Source of the DNA: Stylophora pistillata
Taxonomy: Eukaryota
Direction: 5' to 3'
DNA: 64,000 nt
Assembly: GCF_002571385.2 (NCBI RefSeq)
Contig: NW_019217832.1
Span: 844,122-908,121, forward strand
The notes under the pieces were generated by a model. It was not told where the DNA came from. It did not search any database and saw only the letters and a program-made list of their open reading frames with translations. Below, piece by piece: positions 47,599-50,873 of this stretch. The position numbers and the translations under genes are program-made. Position 1 is the first letter of the stretch; the number at the start of each line of letters is the position of its first letter.

Positions 47599-48447
47599 TT
47601 ATTTGGTAGGAGGGGGTGGGGCTGGTGGTACTCCTCCTGATGAGGGAGTAGCCTTGGGTTTTGCCGCACTTAGATTTCCAGAAGACTTTGCACCACCTGA
47701 AAACAGGAACGACATGGTTGCACACACTTTCTACACATTCCTAAAGCACTGATTTGTAGATTGTATCAGTCAAGATGTGGTAATTTTTACTTTTCAGTGA
47801 ATGAGCACAAAAACATGTTAAGTAATTAGACTGTAAATCAAATTGTTACCTCTCATTGGAAAAGTAAAAAAAAAAGGATAGTTTGCACTTGAGCTAGGTG
47901 GCCCATAAAATAAAAACTAAATGGCAATTTAGCTATTGACATTCCACTTGGAGGCTCTTCTTGTCCACTGTTTCTTGTTCAAACTTGAATATGAAATGTT
48001 GGTTTTTGTGGAGGTATGAAAAACCAGAGAAGCCAAAGAAAAACATTCATGAAGGTTTTCCTGGTTTCCATTAAAAGAAGCAACTAGGAGTATTAATACC
48101 AAACCCAACCCCTCCCCCCTGGGGTGGAATGCCTGTCCACCACAAGGTTTACCCTTCAGTATTTTTGGGCTTCCCTGACAATTAGCTAGTAACTACTTAC
48201 GCCCCTGGGTGGAGAGAGGCACTGTGAAGTGTTTTCACTGAGAACACCACAAATCAGCCATGTTCACTAACAAGATCTGTACTTTTTGGCAAACTTTCTC
48301 TTCTCCTTTTTCAACTTATTACATCATCAAAATAGAACTTACCACCTTTCTGCTGATTTTTTTTACTTGGATATGTTTTTGTTGATTCTACATACGGCTC
48401 TGGAGGTGGAAGTTCCCCACCAAATGAAAACCTTGATTCAAATTCCC
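47599..48447 (-). CDS. Duplicated WIP 3' exon pair (second WASP-binding domain plus terminal exon)
   Basis: Exons 48447-48343 ([35 protein letters not shown]) and 47696-47599 (GGAKSSGNLSAAKPKATPSSGGVPPAPPPPTK*). Intact splice sites, same phases as WIP exons 4-5, introns not similar. Confidence 0.85.
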
Positions 48448-50873
48448 CTGAGGAAGAAAACAAAACAAACCAACAGCAAAGAGTATAAATTTGAAGAGTG
48501 TCCATGTGAAGTTGAAGTTGAAAGAACTTTCAGTTGTTTACTTACAGGACCTATTAGGGCGCTGATAACAGAATTGGGAAAAAAAGGGAAAAACTGACTT
48601 CTAGTTACAAAAAAGAAAATGTATCGAGAACTGTCGCTTTGTTTTCAGCAGACGGTCTTTTTTCCAAATCCCACGCATCATTTCTTCATTCTCTCCTGTC
48701 TTTCTCTTTTATAAAAAAACCTTTCAAGAATGAGCTAAGAATACAAAACTCTTTCTATTTTCTCTAACTGACGAACTTGGTTCTGCAAAAGCAACAACAA
48801 TAATGGGTAGACAAGCGCTGTGAGAGTTGGATTGGTTGCTGGAGTGAGCTACATCCGAGAAAGACAAATAACAAGAACAATTCTTTAAATGGACGGCATC
48901 TTTTGACCATGAAGGTATTTTCAAAAGGAAAGTACTCAAAACCACAGCTCGTAAATCAGACTTCAAGTAACCACTGGTCTGAGTTTAAAAGTTCATCTTG
49001 TGAAAATATTACAATGAGTTAAGCAGCACTGCATCACTTTCCCACATAACAGGCGAAGTATTTTTCACATTCGCGGAGCTGAAAAAAAGAATCGTTTGGC
49101 TCAGAAGTTAAGAGAAACAGAAGTTTTGGTACAAACCTTTGTCCATCTAAAAACTTCAGTTGGTCAGGACATAACACTACACCCGATCAATTAAAACTTT
49201 GTTTCCTGTCATCCACCTGTATTGCAGGGTTCCAAAAAAACCGGCCTTTGTCTTTCAGTCTGGTGCTGGCATTACCACTTACTCAAGTTTATCAGACAAC
49301 TTCAAAAACGATAAGATTTTCATGCTGAATGTTCCGCTGTTTTTCGCTGATCTGCTTTGCTTAGTCATTCAAGTACAGTTTAATGGAGCCGATGACGCCA
49401 TAACTTTGGCGCCATTTGGCAAAACTTGACAGCCAATGAACATCATGGGATTCAACAGGTGAACCGCGGTTTGGACGCGTTTCAAAATTATTTTCAAAGA
49501 ATTTGAGGATAAAACGCCTTATCTGTAACTGTAAGGACAGTAGTAAACAACTCGGAAACTAGTGTATCTCGTTTTTTGACGACAAAGTCGAGATTCCAAA
49601 CCTTAGTTTTCTCATCTTTCTATAGGGCTTTTCAAATGACCCGCAAAAATCAAAATAACTTAAATGAGCATCAGAGAAGAACCTGAAGCTTGAAATCCCA
49701 AACAAGATGGGAGAAATACCCCTTTTTTAGATGATTGTCTTATTTTAGAGCTCAGTGAGGCATCACATTAAATTGGTTGGCGATTTAAGCCTTAAAATGT
49801 TTCTAAGATGTTCCAAAAGGTATGGTGTTTAAATAAACAATTATGTAGTTTTCTTTCTTGAGGATCTTGGTTGTTAAATTGATTTCAGAGTTCGCCTAAA
49901 TATTGAGATGTTCTGTTGCGTAACACGCGATCGAAAAACACATGTCAAAAAAATCCCAGGAGGATTCTGCTTGATTGCCTTGTTAACTACAGTTTTACTC
50001 AAATTTTATCTTTACTTGTATTTCTAAATGAAAAAAAATAGAAAATAAAACTGTTCCTTTTAAAGCATTCCGACATTCCAGTTGTAACCAGAAGCCAAAA
50101 CATTTTACACCAATTTCAAGTCTTTTTTCTTTCCTCAAATTTATGTCTCAAATTGCAGCCCCTAGTTGTTGGCCTGCAGCATGGACAAATAAAATAAAAC
50201 TATTGTTGAGATTTTACAGAACAGTGTCTTTTATTTCTAAAATGATAATATACAATTAATAATCTAAAAATTATTGTTAATTACCACGCAACATTCTATT
50301 TTCTTCTATCATTATTGTTTGGTTATTGGAATTATTAACACTACCACAAGTTTGTGGCAAACTCTTTACACAAGACTCAGCTATTCACCGAAAACAACTC
50401 TCTTGGCTTAAATCTTCCTTCGTTCTATTTCATTTCAAGTGCATTTGAGGCTAACTTTCTTTCAGAAGAAGTAAAATGCACTCCGAAAAAAACTTTTGCC
50501 ACAAATGTGCTCGAACAAGAATATCCACCTAATGCTTGACCCAATTCATTTACGACAAAGATACAATACAAAACGTAAATTTCATTTGCACTAGCGATTT
50601 GTTTATAAATGTGGTTTTTGTACTCATGCTCATCTGAGCAAGTTTCAGTTCTTGTTGCAACACCAACAAATTAACTATCTCCAGCCTCAGTAACCATGAA
50701 GGTTGAAGAAATACACTCTAAAAAATATTTTGTTTTCTGTTACAAATATCACCTAAAAAAGTCCACACCTCTGGATCAATGTTTTTTTTAGGTTGATGTT
50801 GCTTCAATTTTTGGTTTTTTAATTGTAAAAAATTCTGTCTTCATAGATTTGTTGAGAAATTTAGGTGAGAGAC

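What the first reader, a model, noticed from the sequence alone, without database searches (positions are those of the whole stretch)
47599..49430. Second intact WASP-binding module behind WIP: alternative C-terminus or stand-alone ~70-aa microprotein
Seen: the last two WIP exons are duplicated 2.4-3.3 kb downstream. Both copies keep open frames, GT-AG sites and phase-1 junctions, and many differences are synonymous, while the introns share no similarity. The WH1/EVH1-binding epitopes survive (FESRFSF, ELPPPEPY, KTYPSK versus [21 protein letters not shown]). Upstream lie promoter-like signals (AAATGGCG ~49415, CCAAT ~49433), a donor GTAAGT at 49282, and an exon ending ATG GAC AAA G|GTTTGT (49146-49137) that splices in frame to 48447 to give MDKGEFESRFSFGGELPPPEPY...PPPTK*. 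Established: the WIP C-terminal domain wraps around the WASP WH1 domain and stabilises WASP, while WH2 binds actin. Inference: either (a) WIP exon 3 chooses between two 3' cassettes, or (b) an independent gene encodes a WASP-binding-only peptide lacking WH2 and most SH3 sites, a natural competitor or uncoupler of WIP-WASP signalling. I do not know of a described equivalent.
Basis: partly seen in the sequence, partly recalled or inferred. Interest (0 to 1): 0.85.

Follow-up and report, generated by a model that had tools for sequence, protein, structure and literature searches.

The report
Transcribed WIP tail duplicate, WASP-binding microprotein candidate
In this coral, the last two exons and 3'UTR of the actin regulator WIP were duplicated just downstream and are now transcribed and spliced as a separate small gene. 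Its 70-codon reading frame keeps only the WASP-binding motifs, so it is a plausible but unproven natural competitor of WIP.

Summary
The minus strand carries a WIP/verprolin gene with a WH2 motif, a Pro-rich exon and a C-terminal WASP-binding exon pair. Its last two exons plus parts of its 3'UTR recur 3.1-3.3 kb downstream (A' 48447-48343, B' 47696-47599).

- The joint 48343>47696 appears in three studies.
- The joint 49137>48447, from a private first exon (49367-49137, with the ATG at 49146), appears in two.
- No joint 51929>48447 was found, and depth is zero between the WIP polyA site (about 50228) and about 49467.

So this is a separate transcription unit, not an alternative WIP 3' cassette.

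Orthologous loci from other corals lack the insert, so the duplication is lineage-specific. On the copy's lineage, replacements avoid the columns that are invariant among orthologs (1 of 8, P about 0.015; omega 0.06 there against 0.85 elsewhere). The tail lost the conserved [10 protein letters not shown] motif (0 synonymous, 9 replacement changes). The A' exon aligns to human WIPF1 in solved WH1 complexes.

Weak points:
- four upstream ATGs in the leader;
- expression roughly 2-15% of WIP;
- overall omega near 1 on the copy lineage;
- no orthologue of the copy, no translation evidence and no binding test.

My odds are about 50% for a functional WH1-binding microprotein and about 35% for a transcribed, non-functional partial duplicate.

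The parts
49368..49470 (-). Putative core promoter of the copy: AAATGGCG at 49417-49410 and an inverted CCAAT box at 49437-49433
   Evidence: Sequence. RNA contigs of two studies both end at 49367, and depth is zero at 49467-50057. Promoter activity itself is inferred. The region is unique in the genome.
49137..49367 (-). Private first exon of the copy. The leader carries upstream ATGs at 49323, 49272, 49212 and 49172. The start codon is at 49146-49144 (ATG GAC AAA G|).
   Evidence: Contigs X1 record 2 and X6 record 15 cover 49367-49137 without a break and join to 48447. ATG and uORF map.
48448..49136 (-). Intron 1 of the copy (GT..AG)
   Evidence: Joint 48446/7>49136/7 with CT..AC on the + strand in X1 and X6.
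48343..48447 (-). Exon A', a duplicate of WIP exon A. It encodes the WH1-binding epitopes (EFE, FSF, ELPPPEPY, KTYPSK).
   Evidence: It aligns to human WIPF1 in 9s9x_B, 2ifs_A and 1mke_A. No differences across three RNA haplotypes except 48447 G>A in X6.
47697..48342 (-). Intron 2 of the copy (GT..AG)
   Evidence: Joint 47696>48343 in X1, X3 and X6, three studies.
47599..47696 (-). Coding part of exon B', a duplicate of the WIP last coding exon. The tail has diverged and ends at stop TAA 47601-47599, one codon before the ancestral stop position, which is itself still a stop.
   Evidence: The 47600 polymorphism keeps a stop (TAA/TGA) and the 47641 polymorphism is synonymous.
47113..47598 (-). 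3'UTR of the copy. Blocks at 47470-47348 are homologous to the WIP 3'UTR. AATAAA lies at 47138-47133.
   Evidence: The X1 contig ends about 187 nt beyond 47300. Longer contigs in X3 and X6 probably merge with the convergent neighbour's 3'UTR.
51419..51520 (-). Parental WIP exon A (WASP-binding epitopes)
   Evidence: RNA joints 51520>51929 and 50980>51419 in four runs.
50228..50980 (-). Parental WIP last exon: coding part to stop TGA at 50876-50874, then the 3'UTR to the polyA site at about 50228
   Evidence: molecule ends at 50228/50229 in raw reads.
51929..52747 (-). Parental WIP Pro-rich exon 3. Its donor at 51929 joins only to 51520 in the data.
56396..56576 (-). Parental WIP coding exon 1 with the WH2 motif
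   Evidence: Pfam WH2 PF02205, E 3.5e-13.

Best explanation
A lineage-specific tandem duplication copied the 3' end of the coral WIP/verprolin gene: the acceptor of exon A, exon A, exon B and the 3'UTR. The copy landed in the space between the WIP polyA site and the convergent neighbouring gene.

The copy then gained its own promoter and a new 231-nt first exon. That exon supplies an ATG 10 nt before its donor, in the ancestral phase-1 frame.

**Shown.** It is transcribed from the minus strand as a separate mRNA of about 0.9 kb with three exons, spliced at canonical sites. One contig's 3' end follows an AATAAA. Its level is a few percent to about 15% of WIP.

**Inferred.** The 70-codon ORF is translated into a disordered microprotein. 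This peptide keeps the WIP epitopes that wrap around the WASP/N-WASP WH1 domain (acidic-aromatic EFE, FxF, LPPPEPY, KTYPSK). It lacks the WH2 actin-binding motif, the long SH3/profilin-binding proline region and the conserved C-terminal [10 protein letters not shown] motif.

Such a peptide would occupy the WIP-binding surface of the two WASP-like proteins this genome encodes. It could shield or stabilise them while disconnecting them from WIP-dependent actin binding and adaptor recruitment. That would make it a microProtein-type competitor of its own parent.
For: **Duplication and uniqueness:**

**Independent transcript:**
- joint 47696|48343 in X1, X3 and X6, three studies;
- joint 48447|49137 in X1 and X6;
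- both contigs end at 49367;
- zero depth at 49467-50057 in all four runs;
- no 51929>48447 joint;
- raw reads over exon 1 have the orientation of minus-strand RNA.

**Lineage-specific origin.** In L013 and L016 the WIP polyA region is followed by the neighbour's exon after 0.5-0.9 kb, against 3.9 kb in this window. B and B' share a one-codon deletion and an R>K change relative to six outgroup sequences.

**Constraint on the binding residues.**
- In exon A, columns invariant among orthologs give omega 0.06, with pS 0.32. Variable columns give omega 0.85 with pS 0.34. The similar pS argues against recent gene conversion.
- Only 1 of the 8 codons where the copy has a residue seen in no orthologue falls in the 17 invariant columns, and it is a conservative D>E (hypergeometric P 0.015).
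- Both indels are in frame, +3 and -6 nt.
- Differences among three RNA haplotypes in the homologous coding part are one synonymous change and one stop-to-stop change. The non-coding first exon differs by 2-3%.

**Binding competence.** A' aligns to human WIPF1 in 9s9x_B (E 1.2e-7), 2ifs_A and 1mke_A across the solved WH1-contact segment. The epitopes are defined independently in PMC7407642. The genome encodes WASP-type WH1 domains on contigs C79 and C1.

**Shared regulation.** A 3'UTR core conserved among coral WIP genes is retained in the copy.
Against: - Polarised counts on the copy lineage are 4 synonymous and 16 replacement changes, which puts omega near 1 overall. Exon B' has 0 synonymous and 9 replacement changes. 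Much of the ORF therefore evolves as if unconstrained.
- An open frame is weak evidence here. Of simulated neutral copies, 32-50% stay open, because Pro-rich codons rarely mutate to stops.
- The leader has four upstream ATGs with short uORFs. The last uORF ends only 18 nt before the main ATG, which itself has a weak -3 T context.
- Expression is low. Depth is under 1x against 20-100x for WIP in the raw-read run, and about 7-15% of WIP contig depth in X1 and X6.
- No A'-type protein or ORF was found in two large protein libraries, although even this genome's own A' frame is absent there.
- No orthologue of the copy from a related coral could be examined.
- There are no ribosome-profiling, mass-spectrometry or binding data.
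- I could not confirm that the ATG is intact in the other haplotypes, because some differences were not listed.
Confidence: 0.5

Rival explanations
1. This is a transcribed but functionless partial duplicate, in effect an unprocessed pseudogene or young orphan transcript. The duplicated 3' segment happens to lie behind a weak promoter and cryptic first exon. The ORF and motifs survive only because too little time has passed and Pro-rich codons rarely produce stops.
For: Copy-lineage omega is about 1 overall, with 0 synonymous and 9 replacement changes in B', and the otherwise conserved C-terminal motif is lost. ORF retention is not significant. The leader is rich in uORFs. Expression is low, with noticeable intronic coverage. 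The duplicate is absent from other coral lineages.
Against: Replacement changes on the copy lineage avoid the ortholog-invariant WH1-contact columns (P 0.015; omega 0.06 against 0.85), even though synonymous divergence there is normal. Both indels are in frame. All four splice sites are kept and used. Haplotype differences in the homologous coding part are silent. A conserved 3'UTR element is kept.
Confidence: 0.35
2. A' and B' are an alternative 3' terminal cassette of WIP. WIP exon 3 (donor at 51929) would sometimes skip the proximal exons and polyA site and splice to 48447. This would give a full-length WIP with a variant WASP-binding tail.
For: The phase-1 junction is inherited, so the frame would be compatible. 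Assembled contigs drop rare variants, so absence from them is not proof.
Against: No 51929>48447 joint appears in three contig sets or in the raw reads, while 51929>51520 has 35 reads in the raw-read run. Depth is zero at 49467-50057 in all runs. The observed upstream partner of 48447 is the private exon at 49137.
Confidence: 0.05
3. The transcript acts as RNA rather than through a peptide. For example, it could be a decoy for factors that bind the conserved WIP 3'UTR element, or it could act through antisense overlap with the convergent neighbour's 3'UTR.
For: The copy retains the cross-species conserved 3'UTR core at 47384-47348. Its 3'UTR overlaps + strand transcription at 47300-47496. The uORFs predict poor translation.
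Against: An RNA role does not explain the codon-level pattern, in which replacements avoid the epitope columns and the indels are in frame. Low abundance makes titration unlikely. No Rfam family matches at 46000-51000.
Confidence: 0.07

Closest known systems
WIP/verprolin family (WIPF1/WIP, WIPF2/WIRE, WIPF3/CR16): C-terminal WASP-binding domain as solved in 2IFS, 1MKE and 9S9X
   Same: The copy descends from the coral WIP gene. It keeps the segment that aligns to human WIPF1 residues contacting the WH1 domain (FxF, D/E-LPPPEP, K-x-YPSK, acidic-aromatic DEWE-like motif).
   Different: It has no WH2 motif and no long proline-rich SH3/profilin region. It has its own promoter, first exon and start codon, is only 70 codons long, and has lost the conserved C-terminal [10 protein letters not shown] motif.
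[quoted passage not shown] 2007, cited in PMC3397550)
   Same: A naturally occurring truncated product of the WIP locus that separates the actin and adaptor functions from WASP binding.
   Different: It is the mirror image. mini-WIP keeps the N-terminal parts and drops the WASP-binding domain, and it is an isoform of the same gene. The coral unit keeps only the WASP-binding part and is a separate duplicated gene.
Engineered WIP-derived WASP-binding peptide that restores WASP levels (Massaad et al. 2011, listed in the references of PMC3397550), and WBD-only WIP fragments used as dominant negatives in cell assays (the latter from my own recollection, not verified here)
   Same: A WBD-only polypeptide is sufficient to bind WASP. 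This is the activity proposed for the coral peptide.
   Different: Those are laboratory constructs from human WIP. Here the WBD-only unit is a natural, transcribed gene.
microProteins (miPs): small single-domain proteins derived from larger multi-domain proteins, which engage their targets in alternative or non-productive complexes (PMC5381583, PMC9638782)
   Same: The predicted product is small, evolutionarily related to a multi-domain protein, and keeps only the interaction module. It arose by gene duplication.
   Different: Classical miPs mostly titrate transcription factors through dimerisation domains. Here the module is a linear-motif segment and the target is a cytoskeletal nucleation-promoting factor. 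Translation and sequestration are untested.
Drosophila Blown fuse, a competitor in the WIP(Sltr)-WASP complex (mentioned in PMC3397550)
   Same: A natural regulator that works by competing at the WIP-WASP interface.
   Different: Blow is an unrelated protein that binds the WIP side. The coral peptide would bind the WASP side and is a WIP paralogue.

Membership tests
WIP/verprolin family | N-terminal WH2 actin-binding motif | tested here: not met
   Pfam finds WH2 in parental exon 1 (E 3.5e-13) and nothing in A'. The copy's ORF starts 4 codons before A'.
WIP/verprolin family | Long central proline-rich region with SH3/profilin sites | tested here: not met
   The transcript has only three exons. 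The tail keeps a single short PPAPPPP run.
WIP/verprolin family | C-terminal WASP-binding domain with the FxF, DLPPPEP and KxYPSK epitopes | tested here: met
   Alignment to 9s9x_B, 2ifs_A and 1mke_A. Epitope definitions from PMC7407642. The residues are kept apart from a conservative D>E.
WIP/verprolin family | Descent from a WIP gene (homology) | tested here: met
   Tandem paralogue of WIP exons A and B plus 3'UTR. It shares derived characters with the parental B exon.
WIP/verprolin family | Physical binding to a WASP/N-WASP WH1 domain | not testable with these tools
   The coral WH1 domains are split over several exons, so a single-chain reference could not be supplied and no complex job was sent.
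microProtein (miP) class | Small single-module protein related to a larger multi-domain protein | tested here: met
   A 70-codon ORF that holds only the WASP-binding segment of WIP.
microProtein (miP) class | Separate gene or isoform that is actually expressed | tested here: met
   Spliced polyA RNA contigs in three studies. This is met at the RNA level only.
microProtein (miP) class | Translated, and titrates the parent's partner into alternative complexes | not testable with these tools
   No Ribo-seq, mass-spectrometry or binding data. The uORFs argue for weak translation.
Alternative 3' terminal exon cassette of WIP | Splice junction from the exon-3 donor (51929) to 48447, and read-through past the proximal polyA site | tested here: not met
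   No such joint, and zero depth at 49467-50057 in four runs.
Unprocessed pseudogene (dead partial duplicate) | Disabled frame or splice sites, or neutral evolution at all sites | tested here: inconclusive
   The frame and splice sites are intact and used. Omega is about 1 overall on the copy lineage but 0.06 at the invariant epitope columns.

The most novel reading that the evidence does not exclude
A coral lineage has evolved, by partial tandem duplication plus de novo recruitment of a promoter, first exon and start codon, a selected 70-aa microProtein. It carries only the WIP epitopes for the WASP WH1 domain. As far as I know, this would be the first natural WBD-only WIP paralogue. It would compete with full-length WIP, stabilising WASP while uncoupling it from actin and adaptor recruitment. 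Its tail, with 9 replacement and 0 synonymous changes and the conserved Arg-flanked proline motif lost, may have been remodelled by positive selection to shed a WIP-specific interaction.
Probability: 0.42. Interest if true: 0.65.

Novelty: new variant of a known kind. Interest (0 to 1): 0.5.

Why it matters
WIP is known as the obligate chaperone and recruiter of WASP/N-WASP. Its WASP-binding tail has been used alone only as a laboratory tool. A natural gene that expresses just this tail would give a ready-made genetic test of what happens when WASP is occupied but disconnected from WIP's actin and adaptor functions.

It would also extend the microProtein concept from transcription factors to linear-motif regulators of the actin cytoskeleton. 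The locus is a clean, datable example of how a partial gene duplicate becomes a new transcription unit, because the ancestral arrangement is preserved in other corals.

If the peptide is not made, the locus is an ordinary transcribed partial duplicate.

Tried and rejected
1. **Alternative-cassette reading.** Rejected on RNA joints and the coverage gap.
Not used in the contigs.
3. **First dN/dS estimate.** It gave omega 0.42 and dS 0.56 but used a poor protein-guided alignment of exon B. The corrected alignment gives omega 0.68 and dS 0.30.
4. **ORF retention as evidence of selection.** Simulation shows that 32-50% of neutral copies stay open, so I dropped this as an argument.
5. **Cross-species search for the copy.**
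   - phmmer against 1.84 billion representatives and a word search with the 72-aa open frame through A' returned only parental-type exon ORFs from other cnidarians. This genome's own A' frame is not in those libraries either, so the blank says nothing.
   - The single metagenome scan used patterns that A' itself does not match. It therefore could find only parental-type loci. These proved useful as outgroups and for synteny.
6. **Protein search with the Pro-rich exon.** It returned nothing, because the sequence is low-complexity.
7. **Origin of the new first exon.** I found no similarity to WIP intron 3, to the outgroup intergenic region or to anything else in the genome.
8. **Rfam over 46-51 kb.** No family matched.
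9. **Earlier scan notes.** Nothing near this place or on WIP/WASP.
10. **Complex and structure prediction with the WASP WH1 domain.** Not run. The coral WH1 domains are split across exons and spliced models may not be joined here. The 70-aa spliced ORF was likewise never searched as one sequence; exons were searched one by one by reference.
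Full report
**What is in the sequence**

The minus strand of 50.2-56.6 kb carries a canonical WIP/verprolin gene.
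- Coding exon 1 (56576-56396) holds a WH2 motif (Pfam PF02205, E 3.5e-13).
- A Gly-rich exon follows at 54548-54387.
- An 819-nt proline-rich exon lies at 52747-51929.
- Two short terminal coding exons complete the gene. RNA joints place them at 51520-51419 (A) and 50980 down to the stop at 50876-50874 (B).
- Transcript ends cluster at 50228/50229.

About 3.1-3.3 kb further downstream both terminal exons recur. A' lies at 48447-48343 and B' at 47696-47599, each with AG/GT borders and the same phase. A sensitive self-comparison shows similarity in the exons, in about 27 nt at the A acceptor and in blocks of the 3'UTR (50713-50567 against 47470-47348), but none in the introns. The 398-Mb assembly contains just these two copies.

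**Is it an alternative WIP tail or its own gene?**

I laid three polyA RNA-seq contig sets from three studies and one raw-read run on 47300-53200.
- The joint 47696|48343 is present in all three contig sets.
- The joint 48447|49137 is present in two. Contigs there run without a break from 49137 up to 49367 and both stop at that base.
- One 1614-nt contig contains exon 1, A' and B' in order.
- No joint links the WIP exon-3 donor (51929) to 48447. That donor joins only to 51520, with 35 raw reads.
- All four runs have zero depth from 49467 to 50057, which is the stretch between the WIP polyA site and the copy's 5' end.
- The few raw reads over exon 1 have the orientation of minus-strand RNA.

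The copy is therefore a separate transcription unit. The GTAAGT at about 49282 is not used.

One contig ends about 47113, just after the AATAAA at 47138-47133. Longer contigs in two runs probably merge with the 3'UTR of a convergent + strand neighbour, because raw reads at 47300-47496 have the opposite orientation.

Contig and read depths put the copy at roughly 2-15% of WIP. This is a rough figure.

**Origin**

A metagenome scan returned eleven coral-derived loci with parental-type exons. In the genomic loci L013 and L016 the order is WIP exon 3, A, B, a conserved 3'UTR block, the polyA region and then the neighbour's exon (window 46318-46206). That neighbour exon follows the polyA region after only 0.5-0.9 kb, against 3.9 kb in the window, and no second A or B is present.

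B and B' share a one-codon deletion and an Arg>Lys change relative to all six outgroup sequences. The duplication therefore happened in the window's lineage, after it split from those corals.

Synonymous divergence between the paralogues is about 0.3. For exon A this is similar, by my count on the alignment, to the divergence between the window's WIP and its closest available relative (L017/L018). So the duplicate is not recent. The new first exon and promoter region match nothing in WIP, in the outgroup intergenic region or elsewhere in the genome.

**Is the reading frame under selection?**

Pairwise omega is 0.39 for exon A, 1.18 for exon B and 0.68 overall. Polarising changes with the outgroups gives these counts:

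| Lineage | Synonymous | Replacement |
|---|---|---|
| Parent | 6 | 4 |
| Copy, total | 4 | 16 |
| Copy, A' | 4 | 7 |
| Copy, B' | 0 | 9 |

Eight further sites are ambiguous. Taken as a whole, the copy evolves about as fast as neutral sequence, and a simulation shows that an open frame alone means little here.

The changes are far from evenly spread, however. I defined conserved columns from the orthologues only.
- In the 17 invariant columns of exon A, paralogue omega is 0.06 with pS 0.32.
- In the 16 variable columns, omega is 0.85 with pS 0.34.
- Only one of the eight codons where the copy has a residue seen in no orthologue lies in an invariant column, and it is D>E (P 0.015).

The normal synonymous divergence inside the conserved core argues against gene conversion as the cause.

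Other observations point the same way.
- Both indels are in frame.
- The ancestral stop position is still a stop.
- Across three divergent RNA haplotypes, the homologous coding part differs only by one synonymous change and a TAA/TGA switch. One haplotype also has Gly4>Glu at the new junction codon. The non-coding first exon differs by 2-3%.

In contrast, B' has lost the [10 protein letters not shown] motif, which is invariant in the other corals examined. I read this as purifying selection on the WH1-contact residues with a free or remodelled tail. The numbers are small, so the evidence is moderate and not decisive.

**What the peptide would do**

A' aligns to human WIPF1 in three solved WH1 complexes (9s9x_B E 1.2e-7, 2ifs_A, 1mke_A). 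The alignment covers the epitopes described in the literature: DEWE, FYF, DLPPPEP and KSYPSK, including the Lys that forms a salt bridge (PMC7407642). The genome encodes WASP-type WH1 domains on contigs C79 and C1. The C79 gene includes the N-terminal helix that contacts the DEWE epitope.

WIP binding protects WASP from degradation, and the rest of WIP supplies actin and adaptor contacts (PMC3397550). A 70-aa product with only the binding epitopes would therefore be expected to occupy WH1 without those contacts. That is the logic of a microProtein (PMC5381583).

Known relatives of the idea are:
- mini-WIP, the opposite truncation, made as an isoform;
- an engineered WIP peptide that restores WASP levels;
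- Drosophila Blown fuse, which competes at the same interface from the other side.

I found no description of a natural WBD-only WIP paralogue.

**Caveats**

- The leader has upstream ATGs at 49323, 49272, 49212 and 49172. The main ATG has a weak context, so translation may be poor.
- Expression is low.
- Exons were handled one by one by reference.
- For the same reason no complex prediction with the exon-split WH1 domain was sent.

**Verdict**

| Claim | My odds |
|---|---|
| Duplication exists and is an independent, spliced transcript | about 95% |
| It encodes a functional WH1-binding microprotein | about 50% |
| It is a transcribed but functionless partial duplicate | about 35% |
| It acts as RNA rather than through a peptide | about 7% |
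| It is an alternative WIP 3' cassette | about 5% |

It is best classed as a new variant of known kinds: a WIP-family derivative and a microProtein-type regulator born from a partial duplicate.

Noticed in passing
window 50613-50511 and 47384-47348; L013:2667-2775, L014:3711-3764, L012:1550-1658: The WIP 3'UTR holds a core (CACTTGTG.A.ATGAAAT...GTTTTGTA) that is conserved across several coral species and kept in the duplicate's 3'UTR. It is probably a post-transcriptional control element.
   Followed up: partly
window 54791-54975 (WIP intron 2): An inverted repeat with 88-nt arms, 99% complementary and 9 nt apart. It looks like a hairpin or MITE-type insertion.
   Followed up: partly
window 44931-46318, + strand: A convergent neighbouring gene has conserved exons at 44931-45016, 45703-45766 and about 46204-46312, with its stop near 46310. 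Its 3'UTR appears to overlap the copy's 3'UTR. Synteny with WIP is kept in L013 and L016, and the metatranscriptome contig L012 fuses the two transcripts.
   Followed up: partly
window 52907-53136 (WIP intron 2): RNA contigs of three runs replace 159 nt (52939-53097) with a different 39-nt stretch. Raw reads show many loose ends at 52907, 52938 and 53134 on both strands. This is likely a repeat or transposon fragment, or a structural polymorphism.
   Followed up: no
window 51954 (WIP exon 3): An in-frame 3-nt insertion polymorphism (GGA on the + strand) in the proline tract, seen in 38 of 44 raw reads and in two contig sets. The assembly carries the minor allele.
   Followed up: no
G000 C79:339400-340200 and C1:1448941-1449081; also C101 and C468: The genome has two WASP-type WH1 genes, on C79 and C1. 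C101 carries an Ena/VASP-type EVH1, and there is a further WH1/EVH1 gene on C468 that I did not assign. In the C79 gene the WH1 domain is split over at least three short exons.
   Followed up: partly
window 48447 and 47600: Haplotype variants of the copy. A G>A change at the first base of A' turns Gly4 into Glu in one run, making the DEWE-like motif more acidic. In two runs the stop codon switches from TAA to TGA.
   Followed up: partly
L017:330-460 and protein P0006: In the closest relative's WIP locus, the intron after exon A carries an insert with a repeat-like open frame. As a result exon B is not reached within 3.7 kb.
   Followed up: no
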